From the NCBI GenBank assembly GCA_002104905.1, contig MCFE01000273.1, positions 1-64,000 on the forward strand: a stretch of DNA of 64,000 nt. Reading direction: 5' to 3'. Position numbers and translations under genes: made by a program. Shown in pieces: positions 1 through 59,411 of the stretch (the stretch's first letter is position 1; every line of letters starts with the position of its first letter). Under the pieces are notes generated by a model. It made no database searches and was not told the DNA's origin. It worked only from the letters and a program-made list of their open reading frames with translations. This DNA comes from Basidiobolus meristosporus CBS 931.73 (taxonomy: Eukaryota > Fungi > Basidiobolomycota).

Positions 1-479
1 AGGTAGTAGTGGGTAAGCAAATAAAGAGGGGTGATTCTACAGTGGAATATATGATTTGCACAAAGGGAGGTAGAAAAAGGAAATACCATTTGGTAAATTG
101 GTATGGTAGTATTGTACAGAACCAGCTGTAGGCTGCCATACTTTAGATATGATGCCATCAGAGTTTTGCTGTGAGGCAATTGAACTACCATAAAGTCTCT
201 TGCAATATAAGGCAATTGGATGTCCTGGCCATTAGCTCCATTTAATATAGTTGTAGAGCGCAATAAGACTGCAACAATACCATGCAAATATTGTCACAGC
301 ACCAATAAATATTGTCAAGCTTTATCCCTTTATTTGGTAGTTAAATTGGCAAAACATTGTTGTGATCCCATCATAAGATTGTTAAGAGGGTCACTAATTC
401 CAAGCTGCTGGTATTACAACAGTCTTTTAACAGGATTCTGATGGCTGATCCGGATTGGATTCACCTGTGTAGGGTATGT

Positions 480-2138
480 TGTAGCCTTGTCTGTCAGTGG
501 GATCTCCACTCTGTCAGCAATGGAAGATATGAAGGCTGTGGTAGACAAATTGTCCTTTTCTGCAAAGTCATCTACCTTGCGTGAGTGTAGCTCAACTGGC
601 TACGCTTCCAGCTTTTGTGAAAACCGCTGTTTTCTTGTTGGTAATTCTTCTGGGCTTTGCAGAGATTCAGTTGTTCCAGGCTTGCAATATTGATTAGCAA
701 GAATTGCAGTTTTTTTTGCGTGCTTCCCTGTCTCAGGCTTAGGTAGACATTTTTCCCTTGACTTTTTCATTTATTGCTGACAGGTCTTTCACTGCTACTT
801 TGTCTGAGTGCTTCTTGTAATGAACTACATTATCCTGTGGATAAATTCTGCTCTAATGTATCTGATTTGGCCTGCTTGTCCCTTATTTGCACTCTACTGA
901 CAAATTGATGGTTCTTTACCGCTTGTTTTGAGCTTCCAGCTGTAGTTGTGACAGGCTCCTGAGAAAGCTACTGGTTTTTAGCACTGCCAGGTCCTTCACT
1001 ACTACTTTGACTGAGTGCTTCTTGAGTAGTACTCCACTGTTTCCTTGATGAATGTTGTGCTGGTGCATTTGTGTCTGCCTGTTTGTTCCTTATTGGCACT
1101 GTTCCAGCTACCTGACATCTTTTTGATGCTTGTGTGGGGCTTTTGCACCAGCTTGTAACAAGCTCTTGAGGAAGTTACTGACTTTTAAGCATGGCACCCT
1201 TGTCCTTCTGCCTTTGACAGTTTCTGCTATTCTCATGATACTATCCTAGCATACCAATGCTGGCCCAAAATTCACTTGCTTGTTTGAGTCCAGGATAATG
1301 CTCATAGATCAAGTCAAGCACATTCTGCTTGGCCTTGAGTTGCTGATGGTCCCATGGTATGCCAGCCCTGAGGTGATGGTGTGCTAGACTTCTGATGGCC
1401 TCTTGAAAATTGGCCCGCTCTTCATTTTTGAACTCAATGGCTTCACTGATCTTCAATGTCTTTTGATTTTTCAGCTTTAGTATAAGCGCCACATTGTCAC
1501 CCTCCCATACTGTTATAGGTCTTTTGGTGGGCTTTATCTTTGGGCACTGTTGTTGTGCTTGAATGACTGTACAGTGTTATTCTGCTGTTACATTGGAAAT
1601 GGCTCAATTCTTGGCAGTAACATTCAGCTACCTCAGTTCCTTCTTTGCAGCACAGATATTACTTTCTCTACCTGGGATATTGATTGCTCTACACATAGTA
1701 TCTGCTCATCCAGTTTCTGGACTATTTACTGATTTCTCTGGGCCATTGCATCTATCCTATCAGCCACTGCACCTAATTGCCTCATTGATGCTTTGGTTGG
1801 AGCTGACAACATAATTGCTATTATGGATGGTTGTGATGTCATGACAGCCACTTGCTAGTCTTCAACATAAGGTACTGCATTTTCTACACCCTCATCTGCC
1901 AGAGCATAACAGTCAGCTTGCAGCTCTGCAGAGGTTCTCAATTGCCTACTTGACTGAGAGCCTGAGCAGGCTACATTAATCCCTTCAGTGGGCACACTGC
2001 CAACATGGCCTTTTTGGATGTAGCCCTGCTTGTTGCACTGAATGTGAAAGCAAGCTGTTGTCCATCCATTCTTCTACTGCTGCAAGTTGTGAGGCTTTGT
2101 TGAGAACCAGATGGCTTTGCTTTATTTTTTGGCAGCAT
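480..2138 (-). pseudogene. Partner ORF2 of the CACTA-like unit (unknown function), disrupted by stops
   Basis: ATG at 2138; fragment 1241-1492 (AIRSLAHHHLRAGIPWDHQQLKAKQNVLDLIYEHYPGLKQASEFWASIGML) is conserved in copies at 42527-43030 and 58272-58523; 3' boundary approximate. Confidence 0.6.
772..1185. repeat. 207-bp (69-codon) imperfect tandem duplication inside ORF2
   Basis: CAGGTC(T/C)TTCACT motif recurs with GG at 783 and 990 (period 207); same period at 57814/58021. Confidence 0.75.
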
Positions 2139-2515
2139 ATATATGGAAGTGAGTCAAACCAAAGGAGAAATAGTGTCACATATACATGTGAATATGGTGC
2201 CACAACTTTATTTATAATGCTTACTATTGCAGGTAATCATTGAATCTTACATTCATGCTGGTGCAATGTCTCAAATACAAGACTGTCTTAAATTCAATAC
2301 AAGTATTGACCACAAAGTGATGTAATAGCTTTATACTTGTTCCATTGGATAGTGCCGCATAGTGCCAGCCTGTTTATGGTGCCGGATTGATCTGGCACTC
2401 TACGGCACTATCTGGCACTATAATTTCTATCATGATGCCAGTGGTATGATACAGTTACTGGTAATTTTACTCAATCTTACTTATGTTGCTCAGAATAGTG
2501 CTTTCCTTGCTTTAT

Positions 2516-11643: not shown

Positions 11644-11740
11644 ATTAAGTTGTTGAAGGTCAAACTGCTTGCCACATGGACAAGACTACTTTGATTCAAC
11701 ACTCTAAGAGGAGAAAAAAAGAGAATGTAGCTATTGTAGC
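11644..11740 (+). mobile_element. U1 resumes: spacer end and start of the CACTA-like transposase, cut by Copia B1
   Basis: ATTAAGTTGTTGAAGGTCAAACTG... matches 44403-44500. Confidence 0.8.
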
Positions 11741-12089
11741 TGTTGTAAAAATTTGTAATTCCACCTGAATATTCACCTAACTTAGTCACTTAGATCATTA
11801 GCTTCAAATCCTAGAGAATACTGACCAAATTCCTTGTTGGGATTTACTTAGAATATTTTCACCAAAATACCAGGGACCCAGAACATGAAAATTCTCAAAG
11901 TTGTCCAAACAGCCCCAAACTTTGCACACATGTTCTCGGGACCTTTCTTAACCTATCCCACATGTTTGTAATGCCAAAACCAGGTAAAAGTATAAATACT
12001 ACTTTTACATTCAATAAATCATTACGTGAAAACCACATAATCTACTTGTTCTCCCAATCACTTCCAATATCTCCAAGACTCTTACAACA
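11741..12089 (+). repeat. Copia B1 5' LTR (349 bp)
   Basis: TGTTGTAAAA...CTTACAACA; reverse complement of the LTRs at 45621-45969 and 49954-50301. Confidence 0.93.
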
Positions 12090-12120
12090 GGTTCTGAGCC
12101 CCAAGCTGTCTCTCTCTGCA

Positions 12121-14280
12121 ATGTCTACTACTGCTATTACTGGAATTTTTCCCTCTGCTGAAAAGTTGGATGGATCTAACTACCAAGTGTGGAAGGTGAA
12201 GATGAAGATGCTGCTACAAGAAAGAGGCCTTTGGGATACTGTCATGGGAGAAGAATGCCCTCCTAAAAATGTGGGAGAGGAAGCCTTAAAGTACCAGAAG
12301 AAAGAACAAAGTGCCTTTAACTGCATTTGCCGTAATGTTAAGGACAAATTGCTAATTCAATGCTTAAGAGCAAAAACGGCAAAGAATGCCTAGAAGGCAT
12401 TAGAAGACACCTACCAGTCATGTTCAGCTTCCAAGAAAATGTATCTGAGACAAAAATTCTTTACTACAAAGATGCTTCCAGGAGAAGAAATGAAAAATCT
12501 AATTAACAGAATTACCCTGCTGGTTGATGAGATGGAATCTGTGGGCATACCAACTACTGATGAGGATGTGATAGTTACCATCCTGAATAGCCTGACAGAC
12601 AAGTTTCAGGGCCTTGTATCAGCCCTAGAGTCCAGAACTGAAGATTTGACCTTAAATTACGTATATGGAAGGCTCCTGGATGAAGAATTAAGAAAATCAA
12701 GCGCCAATAAGAAGGAAGAAGAAAATGCTTTAATAAGCAATGATAACCAACAAAAGAGGTACCCAAGACCCTACAAAGGCAACAACAACCTATTTTGCAA
12801 CTACTGCAAAAGGAAAGGACACACATCAGAATGGTGTCTCAAAGAGAGAGATTATCAGCAAAAGAAGCCTGAATATGGAAATGCCGCAACAACTGAAGAT
12901 AGACTATTCATATCTGCACTAAATATGACCACAAACAAGGATTCTCAGACATGGTATATTGACTCTGGAGCATCTCAACACTTTACACACCAAAAAGAAC
13001 TTTTACCCAATATCAAGAAATTCCAATTAAGAAGGTTTTCATGGGTGACAATAGAACACTTGTGCAGTGGGAGAAGGAACTATCCAAGTAAACTTTAGAA
13101 GCAGTGGAGGAAGCCATCCACTGACCTTTAAAGAATTACTCTATGTACCAGAAATAGCCAAGTACCTACTCTCTGTAAGCAAGGCTACAGCAGAAGGACT
13201 CAGTTTCAGTTTTGACAATTCTGGATGCAGGATCACTGATCAAAATGGTGCTCATATTGCTTTGGGCATCAGAGATCAGAATCTATACAAGTTGACCTAT
13301 ATTCCATCATATTTGGAAGCCAATATAAGTAACTTAAATGAAGAAACACCAATGCTTTGGCACAGGAGATTTGGACACATCAATTTTGATTATTTGTGTA
13401 AAATGATTAAAGATCAGCTAATTTCTGGAGTGAAAATTGATCCCCCAGCTAATTTGGAGCACTGTGAAGACTGCATATATGGGAAACAAGCCAGACAACC
13501 GTTCAAGAGCTCTGTGTTAATCAAAACTAAGAAAAAATTAGATCTAATTCACTCAGATCTGTGTGGACCTATGCAAAACTTATCCTTAGGTGGGATGAAG
13601 TATTGAATCACTTTTATTGATGATTATACAAGATACACAAGGGTCTACTTCATGGAGAAAAAGGAAGAAGCTCTGTCTAAGTTCAGGGAGTTTAAAGCCA
13701 TGGTGGAGAGAGAAACTGGTGGAAAAATCAAGAAAATATGCTCTGACAATGGTGGAGAATATACCTCAAAACTCTTCATCCACTTCTGCAAAATTCATGG
13801 GATAAAGCAAGACACTACTGTACCATACTCCCCACAGCAAAATGGAGTAGCAGAACAAGCTAACAGATCAATAATTGATATGGCAAGATCTATGATCCAT
13901 GATCAAAAATTATCCTATGATTTTTGGGCGGAATCAGTTGCCACTGCTGTATTTCTTAAAAATAGGAGTTATAACAGAATACTTCGTGATTCTACTCCAT
14001 TTGAAGCATGGTATGGATACAGACCAAGTGCAGAACATCTAAAAATATTTGGGTGTACAGCATATGCCAAAAAACTGGCTGGAAATCAGTCAAAATTTGA
14101 GCCAAAATGTGTAAAATGCATATTTTTGGGCTACTGCAATAAGAGTGAGGCATACAGACTCTACAATACCAAAGCAAAGTAGCTGATCAAGTCCAGGGAT
14201 GTGTTGTTTGATGAAAATTCAAAATTTTCACAAAAAATGACATCAGTTGATGAAGAAAATTTGATCTCAAGTCCACCAAT
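12121..14280 (+). pseudogene. gag-pol: Copia B1 gag-pol fragment (stops and frameshifts)
   Basis: ORF pieces 12121-12393, 12439-13098, 13067-13606, 13652-14182; CNYCKRKGHTSEWC knuckle, GAG-pre-integrase LWHRRFGH. Confidence 0.92.
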
Positions 14281-14780
14281 TGGCAGACTTGGCTTATATA
14301 AAAGAGTATTGTAAGATATTAGGGTGTATCATAGCTTATATGAGGCTACAAAATGGCTTGCTTAGCAGGAAGCAAAAGCTATACAATGAGATATTCAGTC
14401 ATTTTAGAGTGAGTTTAAAGCACAAATTTTGGTATTTATAGATATTCAGCATATTTGCAGCAAAATACAGACAAAAGTCATATATTAGAGAAAACAACAG
14501 AATAGGTAAAGTAGCTCAGACACTTATTAATGTACTGTTTGTTTGTACAAGAAGACATTCACCGAGAGATATGTGTTCAGAGCTTTACAAAGAGTAAATA
14601 AAGCAAGAAAATCACTATTCTTAGCAACATAAGTAAGATTTAGTAAAACTACCAGTGAGTTTATCCTACTGCTGAGAAGATGGAAGAAGTTCTAGTGCCA
14701 GGTGATGCCATAGAGTGCTGGATAGATCAAGCACTAGAAACAGTCTGGCACTATGTGGCACTATCTAATGGAACAAGTGT
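14281..14780 (+). mobile_element. Old Harbinger-like fragment H3: transposase 3' end plus adjacent TIR
   Basis: TGGCAGACTTGGCTTATATA... is a diverged reverse complement of 2333-2832; ends GGCACTATCTAATGGAACAAGTGT. Confidence 0.8.
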
Positions 14781-14782
14781 TA

Positions 14783-14877
14783 GATACTTGATGGCAAACA
14801 TAACAAAATACAAAGAAAGGCTACTTTGAAGGTATGGATAGCCATGCCTTTGCATGGCACTTGATGGATGCTTACTG
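14783..14877 (+). mobile_element. Short CACTA-like transposase fragment
   Basis: GATGGCAAACAT...TACTTTGAAGGTATG...CCATGCCTTTG...GCACTTGATGG matches about 54690-54780. Confidence 0.7.
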
Positions 14878-15226
14878 ACCCTGTGAAAAATAATGTGGTC
14901 CCGCAGGTGGCTCCAATTGGGATCAGCCACCAGGATCCCATTTAGGAACCATCATAATACAAGCATGACAATCTTATGATAGGATCACAACAGCATCTTG
15001 CTAATTTAGCTGCCAAATAAAGTTATAAAACTTGACAGGGTTTGATTGGTGCTGTGACAATAACTGCATGTCATTGATACGGTATTAATGCACTCTATGA
15101 CAATTTTGAATTGATCAAACCAGCCAGGACATTCAATTGCTTTAAGTGGCAAGGGACTTGATGGTTTTTCAACTGCCTCAATGCAAGACTCCAATGGCAT
15201 TATTATGGCAGTATGGTGGCTAACAA

Positions 15227-17971
15227 CTAATTCATTATATTGCTGCAGTAATAAGTTGCCAAATGGTATTTCCTTTTACTACCTCCTCTTGTGCAATTCA
15301 TATATTCCACTGTAGAATCACCAATCTGTATTTGCTTACCCACTACTACCTTGAGTATTCCACATATAGTTTGAATCAAAAAAGCTGTGGCCTCCTGCTT
15401 ACTAACCTCTGCAAATGCATACACCGGCTGCATTTGAAATACTTCTATCACCTCAACTTTACAGCTTTATAGTGCAATGCTTGCAAAGTTACCACTTTAC
15501 TTGTACTGCTGGTAGTGTATTCATCTTAGTGTATTCCTATTGCAGACATATGCTTGGTAGTTGCCACTTCTGCCATGAATACCTCTTCAATATTTGCAAA
15601 GAACATTTTTGAATTTAGCCAATGTATTCCTTCTCCCTGCTGGATTCAAGTCCCCCTTATGGGTGCACTCTGGCACTTGTTTGCGTGAATTCCATATTAA
15701 AAGGTGTAGAAGCTGGCTTGTGACCATGAAAATTCTGACATATCTTGGTAAAGTTCTCCTGCTAAGAATTAGTTGTTTGTTGCACCCAACCCACTTTGCA
15801 TTATTTAATGGATTACCCATGCATTGGGGCTGCTTAGCTTCTTACTGCCATATGCATAGGTGGCTCCTTGTACCCATCTGTCCTCAGTATTTTCTAACCC
15901 TTTGTGGCTCTCCTTGATGTGCCAACTCATCACATCCATGACAGACTTGAAGTCAATATTTGTGAGGAGACTGGGATTTGGTAGCACCTACAACTCAACA
16001 CCTTTTCCTATCTCTTCACACATCTGCTGCATAGGAAACTCCTAAAAGGTGAAGCAAGGCCTAATATTCTCAACACACTAAGCAAGATGTAATAGAGAAT
16101 GGATACAGTAGAGGCAGAGATCTACATGATCAGCTTTATACTTGTAGTATAGCAGCTCAGATCCTGTTACAAACTCCTTGCACAACAGTGGTAGATGCAT
16201 CAAGTTGGCACTGGTGATCTGCTTCTGGATAAATGTTCCAACAATGTCCACATATGTATCCCAATGCTTTCAGTGTACTCTTGGTAGGAATGGCTTCAGA
16301 ATGCCACTTGAATAAATACATAACTAGTTCATACACTCTTTGCATTTGTATTGTTTGATATGCATATGGATATTGATTGAAAGCCCTGAGACAAACTTGG
16401 GGTAGCTGATAGTCTGTAATGTTCTGCCAATACTTTCAAATTTCTCAGGTATCTCAAAGTTCTCATTTGGCTTGATATTACCCTGTACAATTTTGTCATC
16501 AGTACAGGGCTATTGTTGATAAGCAAATGCATTGCTCCCAGTGGAAATCTTTTGCTCCAACAGATACTCCTATCTTAAGTATCTCCAGTTTCCAATTGAT
16601 CCCATATTCTGGCCAATGGCTTATAGTTTGCCAACTTTGCTATCATTGCATGCTGACTTCTATATGCTATCTCTGTGGGAAGATGATGTTTTTAGTGTAG
16701 GTGTTTGGGTAATAATATGTGCAAGTTACAGAGTAAATCCCCTTGATCTCACATACTTGACAACAATACTGTCTATTGTGCCCAGAAAAACTGGATACCT
16801 TGCTAATGGTTGGGGTATCTCTAATGCAGATGATAAAATACACTTTTACATGATGGCCATTGATTGTTATCCTCCTGGAAAACATACAAAATTCACTCAG
16901 CAATAGATACAGGTTGCTATCCAGGCTGGAAGGCGACTTAGGCCAGATACCAGTGAGACTATCATCCAATCTTTACACCAGTACTGTAAGATGGACGGCA
17001 GATTCAGGTGGATGAGAATCAGTAGCCAGCTGTATGCAATGGTTTAGTACTTGTTTAATGAGAATCCATTAAGTGTCAATGCAAAGGCATGGTCATATAT
17101 ACCTTCAAATTAGCCTTTGTTTCTTAGCTGTTTGCAATGATTACCATTTAGTATATTGGATATGTTTACGCATGATTAATACTGAGTGCGGTACTGTATA
17201 GCTTTGCAATATTTGTTGGACTGCATGAGCTTCCTTAGATGGGGTATAACCAGAATATATCTGGAGTGTGAGCAATGTTTTCTTGCAATGGTAGCATTTT
17301 CAGATATGAATGCCATGCAACAGTTGACACATGCTGGAATCAGGACAGTCACTGGGCCATATGTTGCCAGCTACATGACTGTTGTCCATTTGTACCATGC
17401 ACATTGTAATTTGCATCCTGGAGTGATTTTGGCAAGAAGCAGTAATAAATACTCAAAGCCCCCATTATTGATATTAGTGGAAATACACCACTTCTCTAGC
17501 TACAGCACTACATCATTCCCCAGAAGATGGAATACTAGGCTCTCTTGACTCCATAAGGTATCCTTGGCAATTGTTTCAGCAGGTGTTGTTGCATGTCATG
17601 TTGGGATTTGACCAAGCTCAGGCATGGTACTGTTGTTAGGGGAGATAGGCTCATAAACCATCAAAGAGCCTTCTTTGTCAGAGCTATCACTCTGCATGCC
17701 ATATTCAGAAGGCTGAGGTGAGCCCAAAGGCATCATAACACATCTCACTAAGTTTCAAAAGGTGACAAAGATGGCCAGGTGCCAATGTAGAAATTTCATC
17801 TGGTCAGCAAGATAATGTTGGTACTGTAATGACTGATGAATGGTCAAATATGACCTGTGTGGCAAAACACAGGCCATAATCCATACAGTACTTCCTATGC
17901 ACTCTGCATGCTTCATGGCTGATAGGCTTGCTACAATAGCCACCAAGTCTTTTTCTCTTCTCTTAAGGTAT
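15227..17971 (-). pseudogene. CACTA/EnSpm-like (Tnp2-family) transposase, heavily degraded
   Basis: NLYLLLSEFCMFSRRITINGHHVKV...RDTPTISKVSSFSGHNRQYCCQVCEIKG (16667-16969); collinear with 44458-57142. Confidence 0.82.
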
Positions 17972-18216
17972 TAAGTCAAAGTAGTCTTGTCCATAGGGCA
18001 AGTAGTTTGGCTTTCAACAGTGTAATACTATTATATGACTTTATGGTCAATATTCATGTAAATATAAGACAGTCTTGCATTTGATACATTGCACCTACAT
18101 GAATGCAAGATTCAGTGATAACTCACCATAATAAGCATTTTGAACAGAGTTGTGACACCTCATACACATGTATATGTAACACTATTTCCCCATTAGTTGG
18201 CCTCACTTCCATATAT

Positions 18217-19877
18217 ATGCTACCAAGAAACAAAGCAAAATTATCTGGTTCCTAACCAAACCCCATTACTGACAGCAGCAGAAGAGCAGTTGGACAACAG
18301 CTTACTTTGACATTCAGTCAGCAAACAGGACTACATGAAATAAGTCAATGTTGACAGTGTACCCACTGAAGGTAAAAGTGAAGACTCTCCAAGCTCTCAG
18401 TTGAGTGGGCAAATGAGAACCTCTGTTGAGCTGCAAGCTGACTGCTATTCTCAGGCAGATGAGAGTGTGGCAAATGCAGTACCATCAGTTGAAGATTAGC
18501 AAGTGGCTATCATGACATCACTAAAACCCATATTAGCAAGTATGTTGTAAGCTCATACCAAATCATTGATGAAGTCATTAGGTGCAGTGGCAGAGAGGAT
18601 AGATGCAATAGCCCAGGGAATTCAGGAAATTGTCCAGAAACAGGATGAGACAATAATATGTGTAGAGCAATCAATATCCCAGGTAGAGAAAGCAGTATCT
18701 GTGCAGCAAAGAAGGAACTCAAGTAGCTCAACGTTTCAGCTAAGAGATGAGTCATTTCCCAATGTAACAGCAGAGGAACACCATATGGTCTTTGAATCAC
18801 AACCACAGTGCCCAAAGAAAAAGCCCACAGAAAAACCTATCATAGCATAGGAGGGTAACTATGTGGTGCTTACACCAAAGCCTACAAATCATAAGACATG
18901 AATATCTGAGATGCTGCTGAGTGCAATATTAAGGAGTAGGCTAATATTCAAGAGGCCATTAGAAGTCTAGCATGCCATCATCTTATGGCAGGCATACCAT
19001 GGGACCGTCAGGAACTAAAGGCAAAGCAGAATGCGCTTGACTTGTTCCATGAGCTTTATTTTGAATTCAACTGGGTGAACAGATCTTGGGCCAGTAATAG
19101 TATGCTAAGAAAGTATTATCAGAATAGCCAAGACTATTAAAGGCAAAAGAACAAGTGTGCTATGGCTGGAAGTCAGCAGTTTCCTCAAATGCCTGTTACA
19201 AGCAGGGCCAAAAGCTCCAAACAAGTGTAAAGCAGACATCATGCAGCTGGAAGAGTATCATTAACAGACAAGCAGGCAGAAACATGTTCACCAGTATAAC
19301 ATGTATGAAGAAAAAAGCATAGGACCACTCAAGAAGCACTCAGTCAAAGTAACGGTTAAGGATCTGGTAGTGATAAATACCAGTAGCTTTCACAGGAGCC
19401 CACCACAATTAAGTCTGAGAACTCCAAACAAGCCAAAATCAAACATCAGATTGCCAGAAGAGTGTCAGCAAGAGACAAGCTGGCCAAAACAGATGCATTA
19501 GAGCAGAATTTATCAAGGAGAAGCTCAGTTCATTACAAAAAGCACTCAGACAAAGTAGCAGCAAAAGACCTGGCAGTGAAAAAGGAAATGGTAAATGGAA
19601 AAATGTCTGCCCAAGCCTGAAACAAGGATGCATGCAAAAAAACTGCAGTTGTTGCCAATTAATGCCACAAGCCTGGAACAGACTGAATTCCATCATAGCT
19701 CAGAAGAATTACCAATATGAAACCTGCTGTTCTCACAAGAGTTTGAAGCACAGCCAGTTGAGCTACACTCCAGTGAGGTAAAAGAGTTTGCAGAAATAGG
19801 CAATTGGTTTACCACAGCCTCCAAATCCTCCATTTTTGACAGAGTGTGCACCCCACCTACAGACAAAGTAACAGCAT
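18217..19877 (+). pseudogene. CACTA-like partner ORF2 in U2
   Basis: ATG CTA CCA AGA AAC AAA GCA at 18217; piece 18566-18850; homologous to 57370-59170. Confidence 0.6.
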
Positions 19878-19878
19878 C

Positions 19879-20735
19879 AAGAACTCAAAAGGATATCACA
19901 ATGGCTTCAGGAGTGTCATCAACTATGACTAGGATATGTCTGAGGCTAGAAAGCATTAAAAGACTAAGCCAAAAGGCTACAATCACTATGTAGGCCTTTG
20001 CTTCAATTATCACCAGCATGAGCATATGTCAATGTACTGCCCTCAGAGAAGAAAGGAGTATCAGTAAAACAACAACCTTTAGCAACATAGAGGCCTGTCA
20101 GTATAGTAGCATAGAGGACCAACATGAAGAAGACTTGGAGCTCAACCACCACATGGCAGAAGAACACTTAACCCTTGTAACCTCATTTCAAGGATGCAAT
20201 TATACTGAAATGGAGTAATCAATGCAGTACCTGCCAAGATTATGCTTGACTCAGGAGTTTCTCATCAGTACAAATCAGACCAATTTGCCTTGAACACTGT
20301 TATCAACCTGAATGTGCCAAAGCAGCTTCAGCCTCCTTGAAGAAAATAAGAAAAGACTAGCAAAATACCATCATTTTTTCTACTGAGTTCCAAGTTTCTC
20401 AAAATAGACAGCTCTCAATATATCTGTTGTTAACTGATGGGCATGCAAGCAAACAAATTCTCTGGTAGGAGACTAGGTCAACCAGCATCCATGCCAAATT
20501 TGGCAATTAGCTGCCAATTACTTCTATCAAAAATTGCATTTGGAATTCAAACCAAAAACACCAGCTGAATAACAGATTAGTAACAATAGAATACCAGTTG
20601 AAAATTAGAAGAATTCTAAGCTTGAGATTTTCATAGGGTCTCAGCAGCTGATGGGAACTCCCATATACTCAGCCATATTACTCTGCTATCAGGAATGAAG
20701 ATCAATGACTATAAAGAAGATCTACAGGCCTATAT
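19879..20735 (+). pseudogene. Old Gypsy family C gag/protease fragments, with an unassigned insert at about 20312-20635
   Basis: QKGYNHY, GLCFNYHQHEHMSMYCPQ, PAKIMLDSG, MKINDYKEDLQAYI match C1 (25272-26761). Confidence 0.75.
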
Positions 20736-20736
20736 A

Positions 20737-20990: not shown

Positions 20991-21003
20991 GCATCAAGAT
21001 ATT

Positions 21004-21736
21004 AGACTTGTTCCGTTGGATAGTGCCACACTGAGCCATGAGTGCCAAATGATGCCATAGTGTGCCAGGGAGGCCAAGTGAGCCTACACTTGGCCACAGA
21101 GTGTGAAATATAGATCTGCATCTTCATGCAAAGCAGCCCCTGTGTCTCACTCATTGTGATGGAGAAAATCCATTTTTTGACCTTTTTTTTAGGTCAATGT
21201 TGTACAGGATGTGCAAGAGCATTAAAGGATTGAAGATATACATCTGGTGCTCAATACCCATGGCACTCTGAATCTAGCTCCTGTGGCTTGTAGCATGTCA
21301 CAAAAATGCATGGCACTATCTTGGTCCACTGGTACTATCTGGCACTATAAGTGCTTTGTATTGAACTTACTTTAGGGCTAATATTTAAATATAGTGCCAG
21401 ATAGTACCAGTGGACCAAGATAGTGCCATACATTTTTGTGACATGGTACAAGCCACAGGAGCTAGATTCAGAGTGCCATGGGTATTGAGCACCAGATGTA
21501 TATCTTCAATCCTTTAATGCTCTTGCACATCCTGCACAATATTGATCGACAAAAAAACGTCAAAAAATGGATTTTCTCCTGCATCATAGGTGAGACACTT
21601 GGGATGCTTTGCATGAAGATGCAGATCTATATTTCACACTCTGTGGCTAAGTATAGGCTTACTTAGCCTCTCTGGCACACTATGGCATCATTTGGCACTC
21701 ATGGCTCAATGTGGCACTATCCAACGGAACAAGTCT
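21004..21736. mobile_element. 733-bp foldback MITE of the Harbinger-like family
   Basis: Arms 21004-21349 and 21390-21736 are inverted copies around a 40-bp spacer; termini AGACTTGTTCCGTTGGATAGTGCC; TSD ATT at 21001-21003 and 21737-21739. Confidence 0.93.
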
Positions 21737-21738
21737 AT

Positions 21739-26761: not shown

Positions 26762-26806
26762 CTTGAGGGTGGTTTCTTCTTTCTTTAGGAGGGAGGCTTC
26801 TGGTTA

Positions 26807-27940: not shown

Positions 27941-27944
27941 CAAT

Positions 27945-42540: not shown

Positions 42541-44636
42541 CTCCTTGACTGGGTGCTTCTTGGGTGGTACTATACTTTTTCTTTGAAAAATGTTGTGCTG
42601 GTGCATCTGTGTCTGCCTGCTTGTCCCTAATTGGCACTCTTCCAGCTACCTGACATCTCTTCAAGGCTTGTCTGGAGATTTTGGCCCTGCTTGTAATGGG
42701 CTCTTGAGAAAGCTGCTGGTTTTTAGTCATGGCACCCTTGTTCTTCTGCCATTGATAGTTTCTGCTATTCTTAAGATACTTTCTTAGCATACCAATACTG
42801 GCCCAATATCTGTTTGCCCATTTGAATCCAGAATAAAGCTCATGGAACAAGTCAAGCGCATGCTGCTTGGCCTTGAGTTCCTGATGGTCCCATGGTATGC
42901 CAGCCTTAAGGTGATGTTGTGCTAGACTTCTGATGGCCTCTTGTATTTTGGCCCACTCTTCATTATTGCACCCAACAGCTTCACAGATCTTCAATGTCTT
43001 TTGATTTTTAGGCTTTGGTATAAACACCACATTGTCTCCCTCCCATACTGTGATAGGTTTTTCTGTGGGCTTTATATGTGGTCACTGTTGTTTTGCTTCA
43101 AAGACTGTACGGTGTTTCTCTGCTGTTACATCAAGAAATGACTCATTTCTTGTCTGTGACATTGAGCAACTTGAGTTCCATCTTTGCAGCAAAGATACAG
43201 CTTTCTCTACCTGTGATATTGATTGCTATACACCTATTATCTGCTCATCCTGTTGCTGGACTATTTCCTCACTTCTCTGGTCCATTGCATCCATTGTATT
43301 AGCCACTGCACCTAAATGCTTTATTAATGCTTTGGTATGAGCTGACAACATACTTGCTAATATGGGTGGTGGTGATGTTAACATGGCCACTTGCTGATCT
43401 TTAACTGAGGGTACTGTGTTTGCTACATTCTCATCTGCCTGAGCATAACAATCAGCTTGTGGCTCTGCAGAGGTTCTGAAATGTCTACTTGACTGAGAGC
43501 CTGAGGAGTATGCATTATTACCTTCAATGAGCACACTATCCACAGGTACTTTTTTGTATGTAGCCCGGCTTGTTGCACTGAATGTCAAGGCAAGCTGTTA
43601 TCCAACCATTCTTCTTTTGCCATCAGCAGTGGGGTTTGGTTGAGAACCAGACAACTTTGCTTTATTTTTTGGTGGCCTATATATGGAAGTGAGTCAAACC
43701 AAAGGGGAAATAGTGTTACATATACATGTGTGTGTGGTGCCACAACTGTCATGATCACATGACAACCATGAACACCCATGCCAAGCTTCAGCTTCCTAGC
43801 TCAATTTCTAAGAAATTCCTTCTGGAACCTTCTACCACCTTCCAGAAAGTTCCTGACCATTCCAAACCATTGTTACACAATGGAACATTCCATGGAAGCT
43901 TTCCATCGTATTTTTCATAGTCCAGTACCATATATGGAAATACCAGGTCACATGACTTAGTTACATGATCAGGTGACCCAATCCATCTCCCCATCCTGTC
44001 TCAGTGCCGTGTCATCTATGTCATTATCCCCAGCACCATTGCTGTGCCTCACCCCACAACCCCATTAGTATTAGCTAATATCTCTCAGCATCAGTATAGC
44101 CAAAAAGTATATATAGTCCTATCCCCCCTTAAGTATTCCTCAGTCTGATAAACACAGGTCTTGAATAAACAGCCTTGCCTTGGAAATCTGCCTTGCCTTG
44201 TTGATCCACACCTAAGTCCTTTCCTGGTCCTGCCTTGCTTAGCTCTACTCTCCTGCCTTGTGTCTATTCATAACAACAACTTTATTTATAATGCTTACTA
44301 TGGCAGGTCATCATTGAATCTTACATTCATGTAGGTGCAATGTCTCAAATACAAGACTGTCTTAAATTCACATGAGTATTGACCAAAAAGTGATATAATA
44401 GCATTATGTTGTTGAAGGTGAAACTGTTTGCCTTATAGACAAGACTTCCTTGACTCAATGCCGTAAGAGAAGAGAAAAGTACCATGTGGCTATTGTGGCA
44501 AGTCTCTCAGCCATGAAGCACACAGAGAGCATAGGAAGTATTACAAGGATCATGGCCAGTGTTTTGCCACCCAAGTCATATTTGACCAATCATTGGTCAT
44601 TACTGTACCAACATTATCTTGCTGGCCAGTTGATAC
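42541..44636 (+). mobile_element. CACTA-like chain U3, left part: ORF2 (minus, 3'-truncated), spacer, transposase start
   Basis: ORF pieces 42527-43030 and 43226-43588; spacer with the empty Harbinger site (44403 ATT); VPCGYCGKSLSHEAHREHRKYY at about 44480-44545; continues at 54012. Confidence 0.82.
43747..44275 (+). repeat. Family D solo LTR D1 (529 bp)
   Basis: TGTCATGATC...TTCATAACA, TSD ACAAC (43742-43746, 44276-44280); homologous to 55011-55536; orientation not established. Confidence 0.88.
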
Positions 44637-54011: not shown

Positions 54012-57000
54012 TTCTATATTGGCACCTTGCTGTCTTTTTCACCTTGTGCAAGCTGAGTCAGGTGAGTTTGTGACACCTTTAGGCTCACCTTGGCCTTCTG
54101 AGTATGGCATGCAGAGTGAGCTCTCACTAAGAAGGTTCACTGATGGATTTTAAGCCTATCTCCCCTAACAACAATACTATGTAGAAGCCCAGCCAAATCC
54201 CAATATGAAATGAGACAACACCCATTGAAACAAATGCCAAGGATACCTTATGGAGCCAAGTGAGCCAAGTAATCCATCTCCCGGTGAATGATGTAATGTT
54301 GTAGCTAGAGAAGTGGTGTGTTTCCACAAATACCAGTAATGGGGGCTTTGTGGATTTATTACTACTTCTTGCCAAAATCATACCATGATACAACTTACCA
54401 TTTACATGGTACAAGTGGACTACTGAAATGCGGCTGGCAGCATATGATCTAGAGACTGTCCTGATTCCAGCATGTGTTAACAGTTACATGGCATTCATAG
54501 CCAAAAATGCTACCATTGCAATGTGTTCAAATTGTCAGGAATCCACCACCATTGAGGGATAACATTGTTCACACTCCAGATATATTCTGGTAATACCCCA
54601 TCTGAGGAAGCTAATGCAGTCCAACAAATATTGCAAAGCTTTACAGTACCACACCCAGTATCAATCAAGCGCAAATGTACCCAATACATTAGATGGCAAA
54701 CATTGCTAACAGCTAAGAAGCAAGGGATACTTTGAAGGTATGTGTGACCATGCCTTTGCCTTAGCACTTGATGGAGTCTCATCAGACAAGCACTCTACCA
54801 GTAAATCTTGCTGGCCACTGATTCTCATCTATCTGGATCTGCCACCCATCTTATGGTATCAGATCAATAATCCAATGGTAGTATCACTTGTATCTGGGCT
54901 AAATCATAATCCAACCTAGATAGCTACCTATATCCATTGCTGGATGAATTTTGTATGCTTTCCAGCGGGATAAGAGTTAATGGCCATCATATAAAGGTGC
55001 ATATTATTATTGCAATGATCACATGATATCCCTGGTCTCCAATTATCTAGCCATATCAAGTTGGTGAAGAAATCCCAGTTCTGTCTAGAAATTTCTACTA
55101 CATTCTAGCAGCTTCTTGAAAGCTCCAAGTCAATGTTACACAATGGAACATTCTATGGACGCTTCCCATTTGAGCTTATGTATTCCTAAGCCATTTATGG
55201 TACTACATGTCACATGACCTAGACACATGATCTGCTTATCCCTGACATATCTCCATGTGATATTCCAGTCTGTTCTTTAGTATATTCTATCTTGGCACAC
55301 TTACTGTGCCTCACCCCAGTACCCCATCAGTATTAGCCAATATCTCTTGTCATTCATATTGCCAAAAAGCATATATAGTCCTATCACCCCTTATGTATTC
55401 CTCAGTCTGATAAACACGGTCTTGAATAAACAGCCTTGCCTTGGAAACATGCCTTGCCTTGTTGATCCACACCTGAGTCCTTTCCTGGTCCTGCCCTGCC
55501 TAGCCCTACTCTCCTGCCTTGTGTCTATTCCTAACAATTATCTGCATTGGAGATACCCCACCCATTAGCAAGATAGCAGGTTTTTCCGGGCACAATGGAT
55601 GGTATTGCTGTCAAATGTGTGAGATCCAGGGGATTTACTCCATAACTCACACACATTATTATTTCCCAAATGCCAGCACTAAGAACATCATCCTTCCACA
55701 GTGAAAACATACAGAAGTAAGCATGAAATTGTAGCAAAGTTGGCAAGCTATAAGCCATTGGCCAGAATATGGAATCAATCAGAAACTGGAGATATTTAGG
55801 ATAGAGGGTATCAATTGGAGCTAAAGTTTTCCACTGGGAGCCATGCATTTGCTTTTCAACAAAACCCCTATACTGATGGACAAGTTGTACATGTGGTATC
55901 TCAAGCTAAATGAGCCCTTTGAGATACTGGCAAAATATGAAAGAATTGGCAAGATATTACTGAGTATCTGCTACCCTAAGTACTTCTCACTAGATCCAAT
56001 CAATATTCATATGCATATGCCACCATATAAATGGAAAGACTGGATGAACTTGATTTATTTTTATTTAAGTGGCATTCTGAAGCAATTCCTACCAAGAGTA
56101 CATTGGGGGCATTGGGAGTCATATTTGGACATTGTAGGAACATTATCCAGAACTGGATCACCAATGCCAACTTGATGCATCTACAGCTGTTGTGTTATGA
56201 GTTTGTGATGGGATTTGAGTGGCTATACTACAAACATAAAGCTGAATACCTAGATCTCTGCCGCTACTGTATCCATTCACTACTCCATCTTCCATGGTGT
56301 TTGGAGAATATTGGGCCTTGCTTTGCCTTTTGGGGGTTTTCTATGCAGCAGATGTGTGGGGAGATAGGAAGACAAGTCAAGTTGCAGGTACAACCATATC
56401 CCAGTCTCATCAAGTATATTACCTTCAAGTCTGTCATGGATGTGATGAGTTGGCACATGGAGGACAGCCAGGATGAGTTGGGAAATACTGAGGACAAATG
56501 TGCACATGGAGACACCTATGCCTATGGCAGTAAGAAGCTAAGCAGCCCCAATGTGTGGGTAATCAGTTAAATAATGCAAAGCTGGGTTGGGTGCAACAAG
56601 CAACTAATCTTTATTAGGAAAGCTCTACCAAGGTATGCTGGATTTCTCTTAGTCACAAGCCAACTTCTACACCATTCAATATGGAACTCACACAAACAAG
56701 AGCCAGAGGGCACCTATAAGGGGGACTAGAATCCAGCAGGGAGAAGGAATATATTGGCTAAGTACCAAGAAGTTCTTTGCAAATATTGAGGAGGTATTCA
56801 TGGTAGAAGTGGCGGCAACCAAGTATATGTTTGCAAGATGTGTATGTTACAAGCAGTACAAGGTATATGGCAACTTTGCAAGTATCACACTAAAAAGCTA
56901 TAAAGTTGATGTAATAAAAGTATGTCAACTGCAGAAGGTGTGCACATTTGTAGAGGTTAGTAAGCAGGAGGCCATAGTTTTTTCTCATTCAAACTATATG

Positions 57001-57142
57001 TGGAATACCCAAGGTAGTAGTGGGTAAGCAAATAAAGAGGGGTGATTCTACAGTGGAATATATGATTTGCACAAAGGGAGGTAGAAAAAGGAAATACCAT
57101 TTGGTAAATTGGTATGGTAGTATTTTACAGAACCAGCTGTAG
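54012..57142 (+). pseudogene. CACTA/EnSpm-like (Tnp2-family) transposase; 5' piece at 44458-44636
   Basis: LALDG...SCWPLILIYLDLPP...LDSYLYPLLDEF; GDTPPISKIAGFSGHNGWYCCQMCEIQG; LYY...CIHSLLHLPWCLENIGPCFAFWGFSMQQMCG, all motifs typical of fungal EnSpm transposases. Confidence 0.88.
55011..55536 (+). repeat. Family D solo LTR D2 (526 bp)
   Basis: TGCAATGATC...TTCCTAACA, TSD ATTAT (55006-55010, 55537-55541); transposase frame resumes after it. Confidence 0.88.
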
Positions 57143-57369
57143 GCTGCCATACTTTAGATATGATGCCATCAGAGTTTTGCTGTGAGGCCATTGAAATACC
57201 ATCAAGTTTCTTGCAATATAAGGCAATTGGATGTTCTGGCTGGTTAGCTCCATTTAATATAGTTGTAGAGAGCAATAAGACCTCAACAATACCATGCAAA
57301 TATTGTCACAGCACCAATAAAATATTGTCAAGTTTTATCCCTTTATTTGGTGGTTAAATTGGCAAAACA

Positions 57370-59170
57370 TTATTGTGATCCCATCATAAGATTGTTAAGA
57401 GGGTCACTAATTCCAAGCTGCTGGTATTTCAACAGTCTTTCAACAGGATTCTGATGGCTGATCCGGATTGGATTCACCTGTGGGACCAAATTATTTTTTG
57501 TAGGGTATGTTGTAGCCTTGTCTGTCAGTGGGATCTCCACTCTGTCAGCAATGGAAGATATGGAGGTTGTGGTAGACAAATTGTCCTTTTCTGCAAACTC
57601 ATCTACCATGCGTGAGTGTAGCTTAACTGGCTATGCTTTCAGCTCTTGTGAAAACTGCTGTTTTCTTGTAGGTAATCCTTCTTGGCTTTGCAGGGATTCA
57701 GTTGTTCCAGGCTTGCAATATTAATTAGCAAGAACTGCAGTTTTTTTTGCATGCTTCCCTGTCTCAGGCTTAGGTAGACATTTTTCCCTTGATTTTTTCA
57801 TTTATTGCTGCCAGGTCTTTCACTGCTACTTTGTCTGAGTGCTTCATGTAATGAACTACATTTTCCTGTTGATAAATTCTGCTCTAATGTATTTGATTTG
57901 GCCTGCTTGTCCCTTACTTGCACTCTACTGACAAATTGATGGTTCTTTACCGCTTGTTTTGAGCTTTCAGCTGTAGTTGTGACAGGCTCCTGAGAAAGCT
58001 ACTGGTTTTTATCACTGCCAGGTCCTTCACTACTACTTTGACTGAGTGCTTCTTGAGTGGTACTCTGCTGTTTCCTTGATGAATGTTGTGCTGGTGCATC
58101 TGTGTCTGCCTGTTTGTTTCTTATTGGCACTCTTCCAGCTACCTGACATCTTTTTGATGCTTGTGTGGGGCTTTTGCACCAGCTTGTAACAAGCTCTTGA
58201 GGAAGTTACTGATTTTTAGCCATGGCACCCTTGTCCTTCTGCCTTTGACAGTTTCTGCTATTCTCATGATACTATCCTAGCATACCAATGCTGGCCCATA
58301 ACTCATTTGCTTGCTTGAGTCCAGGATAATGCTCATGGATCAAGTCAAGCACATTCTGCTTGGCCTTGAGTTGCTGATGGTCCCATGGTATGCCAGCCCT
58401 GAGGTGATGGTGTGCTAGACTTCTGATGGCCTTTTGAATATTGGCCCACTCTTCATTTTCGAACTCAATGGCTTCACTGATCTTCAATGTCTTTTGATTT
58501 TTCAGCTTTGGTATAAGCGCCACATTGTCACCCTCCCATACGGTGATAGGTCTTTTGGTGGGCTTTATCTTTGGGCACTGTTGTTGTGCTTGAATGACTG
58601 TACAGTGTAATTCTGCTGTTACATTGGAAATGGCTCAATTCTTGGCAGTAACATTCAGCTACTTGAGTTCCTTCTTTGCAGCACAGATATTGCTTTCTCT
58701 ACCTGGGATATTGATTCCTCTACACATAGTATCTGCTCATCCAGTTTCTGGACTATTTACTGACTTCTCTGGGCCATTGCATCTATCCTATCAGCCACTG
58801 CACCTAATTGCCTCTTTGATGCTTTGGCTTGAGCTGACAACATACTTGCTAATATGGATGGTTATGATGTCATGACAGCCACTTGCTAGTCTTCAACATA
58901 AGGTACTGCATTTTCTACACCCTCATCTGCCAGAGCATAACAGTCAGCTTGCAGCTCTGCAGAGGATCTCAATTGCCTACTTGACTGAGAGCCTGAGCAG
59001 TCTACATTAATCCCTTCAGTGGGCACACTGCCAACATGGCCTTTTTTGGATGTTGCCCTGCTTGTTGCACTGAATGTGCAAGCAAGCTGTTGTCCATCCA
59101 TTCTTCTACTGCTGTAAGTTGTGAGGCTTTGTTGAGAACCAGATGGCTTTGCTTTATTTTTTGGCAGCAT
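57370..59170 (-). pseudogene. CACTA-like partner ORF2 in U3
   Basis: Pieces 58886-59170, 58272-58523, 57370-57609; includes the 207-bp duplication at about 57803-58216. Confidence 0.6.
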
Positions 59171-59411
59171 ATTTATGGAAGTGAGTCAAACCAAAGGAGA
59201 AATAGTGTCACATATACATGTGAATATGGTGCCACAACTTTATTTATAATGCTTACTATTGCAGGTAATCATTGAATCTTACATTCATGATGGTGCAATG
59301 TCTCAAATACAAGACTGTCTTAAATTCAATGCAAGTATTGACCAAAAGGTGATGTAGTAGCTTTAGACTTGTTCCATTGGATAGTGCCACATAGTGCTTT
59401 CCTTGCTTTAT

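What the first reader, a model, noticed from the sequence alone, without database searches (positions are those of the whole stretch)
14878..19877. Exactly one unit-length, circularly permuted CACTA-like monomer
Seen: the two ends of this 5000-bp segment are adjacent bases in the tandem copies. The minus strand at about 57530-57481 reads ...CACTGACAGACAAGGCTACAACAT|ACCCTACAAAAAATAATTTGGTCCC. The monomer ends ...CACCTACAGACAAAGTAACAGCAT at 19877 and begins ACCCTGTGAAAAATAATGTGGTCCC at 14878. The opening point lies inside a reading frame that runs through it in U3 (57370-57609). There is no TIR and no TSD, and the two flanks are unrelated (CACTA fragment on the left, Gypsy gag on the right). Inference: two independent deletions are unlikely to meet at the same base of a 5-kb unit. 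Either a unit-length circle was opened and captured at a break, or this site is the true TIR-less terminus. Neither is what a cut-and-paste CACTA normally leaves.
Basis: partly seen in the sequence, partly recalled or inferred. Interest (0 to 1): 0.78.

Follow-up and report, generated by a model that had tools for sequence, protein, structure and literature searches.

The report
Single-unit transposon copy without inverted ends
This is a real, exactly one-unit-long (5,000 bp) copy of an old two-gene jumping element of the CACTA/EnSpm kind, inserted cleanly into another copy of its own family. It has neither the inverted ends nor the target duplication that such elements normally leave, so the family probably moved in an unusual way, but one decayed copy cannot prove how.

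Summary
Observation confirmed. Similarity to the head-to-tail copies stops exactly at 19877 (…ACAGCAT) and starts exactly at 14878 (ACCCTG…). These bases are adjacent at 57507|57506 and at 476|475.

The unit carries a CMC/EnSpm (Transposase_21) transposase remnant on the minus strand (17484→15811). It also carries an orphan second gene on the plus strand. The two are divergently arranged, so the unit ends lie outside both.

The 96 bp on the left (14782-14877) is an inverted transposase fragment of another family member, X'. The first 11 bp on the right continue X' from where the left flank stops, apart from two absent bases (9/11, P≈3e-4). The unit is therefore a clean nested insertion with no TSD and 0-2 target bases lost.

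No TIR, subterminal repeat or inverted partner of the left end exists in the window.

Best reading (0.5): 14878/19877 are the family's own unit boundaries, and a unit-length molecule was cut there and joined in without transposase-type integration. Capture of a randomly opened circle (0.25) is not excluded.

Other windows of this genome carry unchecked notes of similar arrays.

The parts
14878..19877 (+). Solitary 5,000-bp unit of element family X. It begins ACCCTGTGAAAAATAAT… and ends …CAGACAAAGTAACAGCAT.
   Evidence: Self-BLAST. End alignments A1 and A2. About 80-82% identical to the array copies.
15811..17484 (-). Decayed CMC/EnSpm-type (Transposase_21/Tnp2) transposase. This is the part with detectable homology. 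The full gene is predicted at about 18027→15250.
   Evidence: tblastn with full-length fungal Tnp2 proteins: P0035 aa 180-739, P0012, P0145, P0001. Those proteins carry PF02992. The piece 54710-54916 (+) hits PF02992 at E = 7e-5.
18120..19384 (+). Remnant of an orphan second gene, transcribed divergently from the transposase. Its 3' limit is uncertain and may run to or past 19877.
   Evidence: The longest open pieces of all copies in this region lie on this strand. Intervals free of stops shared between lineages support it. No Pfam, PDB or protein-database relative was found. The AF2 model is unusable, with pLDDT 49.
14782..14877 (+). Left half of the target: a fragment of another X-family transposase gene (X'), inverted relative to the unit. 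It corresponds to X 17154→17058.
   Evidence: BLAST and alignment A5. 81.5% identical to X and 80% to copy 3. The frame reads …FEGMD…ALDG…, as in the Transposase_21 piece.
19878..19888 (+). Right half of the target. It continues X' from where the left flank stops, apart from 2 absent bases (CAAGAACTCAA against CAAGTACTAAA and CAAGCACTCTA). Weaker similarity continues to about 19905.
   Evidence: Fixed-anchor match of 9/11 to both references, P≈3.3e-4 per position. The reconstructed empty site aligns through the insertion point with 2 target bases missing.
14281..14781 (+). 3' stump of a PIF/Harbinger transposon, ending in its TIR (…GGCACTATCTAATGGAACAAGTG). TTA target triplet 14779-14781 follows the TIR; the far-side copy is lost, so a duplication is shown only for copy 1. 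It is inserted into X' 96 bp left of the unit and cut at 14281-14286 by a truncated copia.
   Evidence: DDE_Tnp_4 ORF 60296→59412 in the paralogue. TIRs at 59374-59398 and 11630-11652, with TTA TSDs.
19906..20736 (+). Gypsy gag (from about aa 205) and downstream fragment. It is joined to the X' remnant by an illegitimate junction within 19889-19916.
   Evidence: tblastn with the gag of the gypsy element at 25922-26803. Frame translation shows …KGYNHY…CFNYHQHEHMSMYCPQ.
54012..59373 (-). Array copy 3, part 1. Read on the minus strand it covers X 18016→19877, the junction at 57507|57506, then X 14878→17796. A ~525-bp foreign insert sits at 55014-55537.
   Evidence: Self-BLAST. Junction coordinates. 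Transposase hits at 54335-56567 (+).
42545..44633 (-). Array copy 3, part 2: X 17792→19347. It is separated from part 1 by a copia insertion (44637-54007, TSD GATAC) and cut at 42540 by another copia. The same ~525-bp insert sits at 43747-44276.
   Evidence: Self-BLAST. TSD check. The two repeated stretches within the array are 84% identical.
1..2341 (-). Array copy 1, a 95% segmental duplicate of copy 3. It covers X 18016→19877, the junction at 476|475, then X 14878→~15351, and runs off the window. Its continuation, X 17930→18019, lies at 11653-11739 beyond a Harbinger insertion.
   Evidence: Self-BLAST. Sequence reads.

Best explanation
The segment is a genuine, discrete, single-unit insertion of a ~5.0-kb two-gene DNA transposon, here called X. 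X carries a CMC/EnSpm-type DDE transposase on the minus strand and an orphan gene on the plus strand, divergently transcribed. The unit sits inside the transposase gene of another, oppositely oriented member of the same family (X').

Its boundaries, ACCCTR… and …ARCAT, are the family's own unit boundaries. In head-to-tail arrays the same two bases are abutted with no spacer.

Shown here:
- Exact unit length.
- Contiguous target halves on the two sides.
- No TSD, no TIR and no subterminal repeats.
- Transposase identity, and a gene layout that puts both ends beyond the 3' ends of the genes.

Inferred:
- There is no second inverted end and no staggered-cut duplication, so integration was not a canonical DDE cut-and-paste.
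- The most economical mechanism starts from a unit-length molecule. This could be a circle released from an array by recombination or by end-to-end joining, or one array unit.
- That molecule was cut at the single recognisable left terminus, (A)CCCTR, and joined into a break by host end joining.
- Homologous (Campbell-type) recombination of such circles with resident copies, or rolling-circle copying, would in turn give the zero-spacer arrays.
For: - **Ends exact to the base:**
- **Clean insertion:** the left flank 14782-14877 is X' (X 17154→17058, inverted). The right flank continues X' from where the left flank stops, apart from two absent bases, matching 9/11 at P≈3e-4 per position. The reconstructed empty site aligns through the insertion point, lacks only 2 bases and keeps the transposase frame.
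- **Transposase:** PF02992 hit. 461 homologues, and the long ones carry Transposase_21. It maps to the minus strand at 17484→15811, with a stop predicted at 15200-15450. The left end is therefore 300-570 bp beyond its 3' end. Gene 2 pieces are on the plus strand at 18120→≥19384. The opening point thus lies in the 3'-3' spacer, which is 16-21% of the unit.
- **No nibbling at either end,** which favours enzyme-made ends over random breaks.
- **Star-like divergence:** X', X and copy 3 are all about 80-83% identical to one another. This is consistent with members of one old burst inserting into each other.
- **Lead from other windows (unchecked first-reader notes):** canonical 5.49-kb copies with two divergent genes, CCCTA termini and 4-bp TSDs. 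This unit starts (A)CCCTG, or (A)CCCTA in copy 3.
- **Literature:** Basidiobolus genomes have large CMC-EnSpm and PIF-Harbinger expansions (PMC5751038).
Against: - Only one solitary copy and one independent array junction are available. Copies 1 and 3 are duplicates of each other.
- The termini do not fit the clade. Described CMCT elements mostly have 5'-CA…TG-3' ends and 2-5 bp TSDs (PMC12730594). Here the ends are 5'-AC…AT-3' with no TSD.
- The right end has no feature of a transposase end.
- The right-flank continuation is only 11 solid bases.
- A randomly opened circle would by construction also give ends that are adjacent in the array.
- All copies are about 20% diverged and dead, with no codon signal left. 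Nothing about activity can be tested in this sequence.
- The link to the CCCTA-ended elements rests on unchecked notes about other windows.
Confidence: 0.5

Rival explanations
1. Capture of a randomly opened circle. Homologous recombination inside a head-to-tail array released a unit-length extrachromosomal circle. It broke at an arbitrary position and was ligated into a chromosomal break in X' by non-homologous end joining. Under this reading the ACAT|ACCC site has no special meaning.
For: - Exact unit length, no TSD, no TIR, and 0-2 bp lost at the target are all typical of end-joining capture.
- Arrays that could shed circles exist in the window. According to unchecked notes they also exist in several other windows.
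- The ends lack any CMCT-type terminal motif (PMC12730594).
Against: - The opening falls in the 3'-3' intergenic spacer, which has a prior of about 16-21%.
- Neither end lost a single base, which is uncommon for random breaks.
- The left end starts with (A)CCCTR, the terminal motif noted for canonical relatives in this genome (unchecked).
- A dispersed family needs a regular mobile form, and this clean insertion into another family member looks like that form.
Confidence: 0.25
2. Multi-unit insertion, later collapsed or mis-assembled. A concatemer of two or more units inserted here, or a single unit was duplicated in situ. Unequal recombination, single-strand annealing or assembly collapse then reduced it to one unit. 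The integer unit length is kept automatically.
For: - Recombination between direct 5-kb repeats always removes whole units, so the result would look exactly like this locus (reasoning).
- Assemblers do collapse near-identical tandem units.
Against: - This does not explain where the outer ends come from, so it is an add-on to either of the first two readings rather than a true alternative.
- The unit is about 18-20% diverged from every other copy in the window, so it is not a chimera of those copies.
Confidence: 0.12
3. The true transposase ends lie elsewhere in the unit, and the locus is a permuted piece that contains an internal end-to-end junction. Candidates are the 12-nt inverted repeat …CCTGTGT/ACACAGG… at 17849-17878, or the …AGTG(7 nt)CAC… site at 19838-19856.
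For: - The 17849-17878 repeat is 11/12 complementary with a 6-nt spacer, has CACAG/CTGTG tips like CMCT ends, and sits in a patch 91% conserved between lineages.
- At 19846, GTG and CAC are 7 nt apart, and that 7-mer matches in only 3/7 positions between lineages.
Against: - Both signals are at chance level. About 0.4 such inverted repeats are expected per 5 kb. Windows with 4 of 7 mismatches are common at 82% identity.
- The arms do not extend.
- The 17849-17878 repeat lies in a frame that is free of shared stops from 18027 down to at least 17800 (the limit of the region analysed) and lines up with the predicted N-terminus of the transposase. No homology confirms this.
- The repeat's spacer is identical in both lineages, so it is not re-formed at each event.
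Confidence: 0.08
4. LTR-retrotransposon-like structure. The 1.86-kb stretch 18016-19877 would be a long terminal repeat, and the locus would be 'internal region plus one LTR'.
For: At first sight the array reads repeat-internal-repeat, and the same sequence (14281-14778) appeared to flank position 18016 in the arrays and position 14878 in the locus.
Against: - That shared sequence is the TIR end of a PIF/Harbinger transposon that inserted independently, with TTA TSDs. X continues on its far side at 11653-11739. Position 18016 is therefore not an element end.
- There is no PBS, no PPT and no conserved TG…CA.
- The coding content is a DDE transposase, not gag-pol.
Confidence: 0.01

Closest known systems
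CMC / EnSpm (CACTA) superfamily DNA transposons, including fungal EnSpm and Plavaka (CMCT clade; PMC12730594, PMC5751038)
   Same: - The transposase is of the Transposase_21/Tnp2 type.
- Its nearest named relatives are fungal Tnp2 proteins from Rhizoctonia and Ceratobasidium.
- The size of about 5 kb and the presence of a second accessory gene also fit.
   Different: - Described lineages have TIRs, mostly 5'-CA…TG-3' (EnSpm CAC…GTG, PlavakaA TGT…ACA, PlavakaB CATCA…TGATG), and 2-5 bp TSDs.
- This unit has no TIR and no TSD, ends 5'-AC…AT-3', and occurs in zero-spacer head-to-tail arrays.
RAG/Transib-type excision, with precise signal-joint circles
   Same: - RAG1 and Transib belong to the same CMCT clade (PMC12730594).
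- By established V(D)J knowledge, cleavage leaves blunt element ends that are ligated precisely end to end into a circle. That is the kind of zero-spacer junction seen in the arrays here.
   Different: - Signal ends carry the CACAGTG heptamer in inverted orientation. No such pair is present here.
- Signal-joint circles are normally dead ends and are not a route to reintegration or arrays.
Bacterial copy-out/paste-in insertion sequences (IS3/IS911, IS30, IS256), with circular intermediates and head-to-tail dimers
   Same: - DDE transposase.
- Unit-length circle with abutted ends.
- Tandem dimers with closely abutted ends, used as active junctions.
   Different: - Those elements have inverted repeats, a short spacer taken from the flank, and TSDs on integration.
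- They are prokaryotic, and no eukaryotic CMC element is known to use this route.
Spy elements (PIF/Harbinger-IS5 group), DDE transposons without TSDs (Han et al. 2014, PMC4122938; cited in PMC12730594)
   Same: A precedent for a eukaryotic DDE transposon that inserts precisely without duplicating the target.
   Different: Spy elements belong to a different transposase superfamily. They have TIRs and a defined AAA^TTT target.
Tandem TE dimers from double insertion, and satellites derived from TEs (McGurk & Barbash, PMC5932611)
   Same: Head-to-tail arrays of a whole transposable element.
   Different: Double-insertion dimers keep both TIRs and have the TSD as a spacer between copies. Here there is no spacer and no TIR.

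Membership tests
CMC/EnSpm (CACTA) superfamily | DDE transposase of the Transposase_21 (Tnp2) type | tested here: met
   PF02992 hit at E = 7e-5 on the piece 54710-54916. The 179-aa piece has 461 homologues, and the long ones carry PF02992 above threshold. tblastn maps aa 180-783 of these proteins onto the locus and copy 3.
CMC/EnSpm (CACTA) superfamily | Terminal inverted repeats starting 5'-CAC(TA)… and ending …GTG-3' | tested here: not met
   The ends are ACCCTG… and …AGCAT. The terminal 500 bp show no inverted similarity above shuffles in either lineage. No inverted copy of the left 20-mer occurs in the window.
CMC/EnSpm (CACTA) superfamily | Target site duplication of 2-5 bp (3 bp for EnSpm) | tested here: not met
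   The flanks …TTACTG| and |CAAGAAC share no repeat. The reconstructed target lacks 2 bases rather than gaining any.
CMC/EnSpm (CACTA) superfamily | Subterminal short repeats (binding sites for the accessory protein) | tested here: not met
   No excess of shared 8-10-mers between or within the terminal 450 bp, compared with shuffles.
LTR retrotransposon | Long terminal direct repeats bounding a gag-pol interior, with PBS/PPT and a 4-6 bp TSD | tested here: not met
   The apparent repeat start at 18016 is a Harbinger insertion site, and X continues beyond it. The interior encodes a DDE transposase.
Helitron (rolling-circle) | Rep/helicase protein; 5'-TC…CTRR-3' ends; insertion between A and T without a TSD; tandem arrays possible | tested here: not met
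   No Rep or helicase domain in 23 scanned ORF pieces. The ends fit on neither strand. Only the absence of a TSD and the arrays resemble Helitrons.
Crypton / DIRS (tyrosine-recombinase elements with circular intermediates) | Tyrosine recombinase gene (plus RT for DIRS); no TIR, no TSD | tested here: inconclusive
   No recombinase or RT domain in any scanned piece. However, gene 2 is an orphan known only from decayed fragments. It had no hits and the model is unusable, so its activity is unknown.
PIF/Harbinger (the left-hand neighbour 14281-14778, not the unit) | DDE_Tnp_4 transposase, TIRs, 3-bp TWA TSD | tested here: met
   PF13359 at E = 1e-23. A 23-25 bp TIR at both ends of copy 1, with TTA on both sides.

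The most novel reading that the evidence does not exclude
A eukaryotic CMC/EnSpm-type DDE transposon family that has lost one inverted end and propagates through unit-length circles or head-to-tail concatemers. The molecule is cut at a single terminus and reinserted without target duplication. This would be a eukaryotic counterpart of bacterial copy-out/paste-in, or a reintegrating 'signal-joint' circle.
Probability: 0.2. Interest if true: 0.8.

Novelty: new variant of a known kind. Interest (0 to 1): 0.5.

Why it matters
CMC/EnSpm elements, the clade that also gave rise to RAG1, are textbook cut-and-paste transposons with inverted ends and target duplications.

A family that spreads as exact units without either feature, and that builds zero-spacer arrays, would point to a circular or concatemeric route of transposition. 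That route has not been described for this clade in eukaryotes. It would also give a concrete route from a transposon to a long-monomer tandem array.

The finding makes this testable, because Basidiobolus-type genomes hold large expansions of these elements (PMC5751038).

On the present evidence it is one old, dead copy. It shows that such an event happened at least once, not that it is the family's rule.

Tried and rejected
1. **LTR-retrotransposon reading** (repeat 18016-19877). My first hypothesis, rejected once 14281-14778 proved to be a Harbinger TIR end with TTA TSDs and X was found to continue beyond it.
2. **'Filler DNA' reading of 14784-14872.** Replaced by 'fragment of another family copy', because the right flank continues that copy.
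3. **TIR searches.** Terminal 500 bp, k-mers and the whole-window pattern all gave nothing above chance. The 12/14 match between 14878-14891 and 19832-19845 is within shuffle noise and is only 8/14 in copy 3.
4. **A direct 'L-prime' duplicate of the left end just before the junction.** Not significant, p = 0.04-0.7.
5. **Palindromic 'abutted ends' elsewhere in the unit.** Chance level.
6. **Codon-position periodicity to map the genes.** No signal even in the transposase, so the divergence is neutral decay.
7. **Shared-stop analysis to fix the end of gene 2.** Stop-free stretches cross the junction on both strands, so it is inconclusive.
8. **Identity of gene 2.** Ten more Pfam pieces, a protein word search, the Atlas, PDB sequences and an AF2 model gave no result.
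9. **More copies.**
   - A protein-guided scan and a DNA-pattern scan of metagenome contigs found nothing.
   - The genome collection holds only bacteria and archaea, so it was not scanned.
10. **Sequence look-ups in the scan's own notes** were blank.

No contig looked human.

Full report
**1. The observation**

The window is a dense nest of transposable elements with 40% GC. Self-comparison shows that 14968-19866 matches, on the opposite strand, two stretches that are head-to-tail repeats of the same ~5-kb sequence.

Read on the minus strand, copy 3 runs as follows:
- X 18016→19877
- junction
- X 14878→17796
- a copia insertion (44637-54007, TSD GATAC)
- X 17792→19347
- a cut at 42540 by another copia

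Copy 1 (1-2341, plus 11653-11739) is a 95% segmental duplicate of copy 3. There is therefore one independent array junction, not two.

Alignments A1 and A2 show that similarity of the locus to the junction region stops exactly after …AACAGCAT (19877). It starts exactly at ACCCTGTG… (14878). In the arrays, ACAACAT and ACCCTA are adjacent at 57507|57506 and at 476|475. The segment is one unit to the base.

**2. What the unit encodes**

Twenty ORF pieces gave almost nothing in Pfam. The exception was 54710-54916 (+), which matches Transposase_21/Tnp2 at E = 7e-5.

The 179-aa piece 56031-56567 (+) has 461 relatives in the 1.84-billion-protein library. The full-length relatives, about 800-1,200 aa, carry Transposase_21 above threshold. 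The named ones are fungal 'transposase family Tnp2' proteins from Rhizoctonia and Ceratobasidium. The Atlas pointed the same way, to DUF4218 and Plavaka.

tblastn with these proteins maps aa ~180-783 onto the minus strand of the locus, 17484→15811. It maps them onto the plus strand of copy 3 and onto a scrambled fourth copy at 32055-32784. By proportion, the gene would start near 18025 and stop between 15200 and 15450. Two shared in-frame stops at 18028-18033 bound the start.

On the other strand, the longest open pieces of every copy lie between about 18120 and at least 19384. This is an orphan second gene. It had no hit by word search, Atlas, PDB or Pfam, and the single-sequence model is unusable at pLDDT 49.

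The unit is therefore a two-gene, divergently transcribed CMC/EnSpm-type element. Its boundaries lie beyond the 3' ends of both genes. Differences between the locus and copy 3 show no codon periodicity even in the transposase, so the ~18% divergence is neutral decay of dead copies.

**3. The flanks**

My first reading was an LTR-like structure, because 14281-14778 seemed to flank X position 18016 in the arrays but position 14878 in the locus. That was wrong.

14281-14778 is the 3' end of a PIF/Harbinger transposon:
- DDE_Tnp_4 ORF 60296→59412, E = 1e-23.
- It ends in a 23-25-bp TIR (GACTTGTTCCATTGGATAGTGCC and its complement).
- The partner TIR lies at 11630-11652.
- TTA duplications are present on both sides.

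In copies 1 and 3 this Harbinger sits inside X between the two genes, and X continues beyond it (11653-11739 = X 18019→17930). In the locus a different Harbinger insertion abuts at TTA 14779-14781.

The 96 bp between it and the unit (14782-14877) is an inverted fragment of another X-family transposase gene, X'. It corresponds to X 17154→17058. It is 81.5% identical to X and 80% to copy 3, and X and copy 3 are 83% identical there.

The first 11 bases to the right of the unit (CAAGAACTCAA) continue X' from where the left flank breaks off, apart from the two absent bases. They match 9/11 to both references at the fixed expected position, against a background of 3.3e-4 per position. Joined, the two flanks align through the insertion point with only two target bases (AA/GA) absent. 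The transposase frame (…ALDG…W) is preserved, and weaker similarity continues to about 19905.

Beyond that lies a gypsy gag fragment starting at about residue 205. This is one of several illegitimate junctions in the region.

The unit is a clean nested insertion into another family member, without a TSD.

**4. Ends**

No terminal inverted repeat exists:
- Left 500 bp against the reverse complement of the right 500 bp scores 22, while shuffles average 20 and reach 29-33. This holds in both lineages.
- Shared k-mers are at shuffle level, and there are no internal subterminal repeats.
- The left 20-mer has no inverted copy anywhere in the window at up to 3 mismatches.

Candidate alternative termini inside the unit are all at chance level. 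These were a 12-nt inverted repeat at 17849-17878, a GTG…CAC site near 19846, and a 12/14 match at 19832-19845.

The frame that 'runs through' the junction is uninformative. 82% of window positions lie in an open segment of 60 aa or more, and both strands are open at the junction.

**5. Interpretation**

Two independent deletions, assembly chimerism with the other copies (18-20% diverged) and an LTR structure are excluded. A discrete, exactly unit-length molecule entered X'. Two readings remain.

*(a) Defined terminus.* The boundary is the family's own terminus. In its favour:
- It lies in the 3'-3' spacer, which is 16-21% of the unit.
- Neither end lost a base.
- The unit begins (A)CCCTG, or (A)CCCTA in copy 3.

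First-stage notes on other windows of this genome describe 5.49-kb, two-gene, divergently transcribed CMC/EnSpm elements with CCCTA termini and 4-bp TSDs. These notes are unchecked and served as a lead only. What I could test here is that the left end carries that motif and the right end has no TAGGG partner.

*(b) Random capture.* A unit circle shed by an array broke at random and was captured. Any such event also gives 'ends adjacent in the array'.

A hybrid fits all the facts. A unit-length circle or array unit is cut at its single recognisable (left) terminus and joined in by end joining. Recombination of such circles with resident copies, or rolling-circle copying, would give the zero-spacer arrays. 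The precise end-to-end joint resembles RAG signal joints, and RAG1 and Transib belong to the same CMCT clade (PMC12730594). These mechanistic steps are inference.

**6. Comparison and membership**

The transposase places the element in CMC/EnSpm. The defining terminal features of described lineages were tested here and not met. Those features are TIRs, mostly 5'-CA…TG-3', and 2-5 bp TSDs (PMC12730594). I therefore file it as a variant with a CMC-type transposase, not as a canonical CACTA element.

DDE transposons without TSDs exist (Spy; cited in PMC12730594) but belong to another superfamily. TE dimers from double insertion keep their TIRs and have a TSD spacer (PMC5932611).

Other agents' notes call the genome Basidiobolus. 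The heavy CMC and Harbinger load agrees with what is published for that genus (PMC5751038). I did not verify the species.

**7. Limits**

- Two metagenome scans returned nothing.
- The genome-wide end mapping that would decide between (a) and (b) could therefore not be done.
- Everything rests on one solitary copy and one independent array junction, both old and decayed.

Noticed in passing
window 2342-11652; 59374-~62635; 14281-14778: A PIF/Harbinger family with a 23-25-bp TIR (GACTTGTTCCATTGGATAGTGCC) and a TTA TSD. Copy 1 carries a young LTR retrotransposon (2861-8780, 701-bp LTRs 98.6% identical, 5-bp TSD). The right TIR of copy 3 is cut by a copia.
   Followed up: yes
window 21003-21737: A ~735-bp foldback whose two arms are 90.5% inverted copies of each other, with Harbinger TIR sequence at both tips. 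It is probably a Harbinger-derived foldback MITE.
   Followed up: partly
window 1-11595 vs 57012-62612: A 95% segmental duplication that carries the X array together with the Harbinger nested in it. The two 'tandem copies' in this window are therefore one lineage.
   Followed up: yes
window 43747-44276 and 55014-55537: The same ~525-bp foreign insert (81% identical; starts ATGATCACATGA…, ends …TGTGTCTATTC(C/A)TAACAA) sits at two different places inside X copy 3. It is a small non-autonomous element of unknown class.
   Followed up: partly
window 17849-17878 (and 44551-44580): A 12-nt inverted repeat, TATGACCTGTGT / ACACAGGCCATA, with a 6-nt spacer and CTGTG…CACAG tips. It lies in a 160-bp patch that is 91% conserved between the locus and copy 3b, against about 82% elsewhere. 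It is at chance level by count, but the reason for the local conservation is unexplained.
   Followed up: partly
window 32920-37608; 44637-54007; 45617-50297; 11740-14286; 62648-63998: Young copia elements. One is complete (TSD GATTT). One is split by a second copia nested in reverse (349-bp LTRs, 98% identical). Truncated copies abut the Harbinger stump at 14281-14286 and the Harbinger TIR at ~62635.
   Followed up: partly
window 27912-28167, 28171-28883, 31921-32789: A fourth, scrambled X copy (74-77% identical), interleaved with gypsy fragments. An X 18140-18860 piece lies between X 15357-15620 and X 15660-16560. Its order could not be explained.
   Followed up: no
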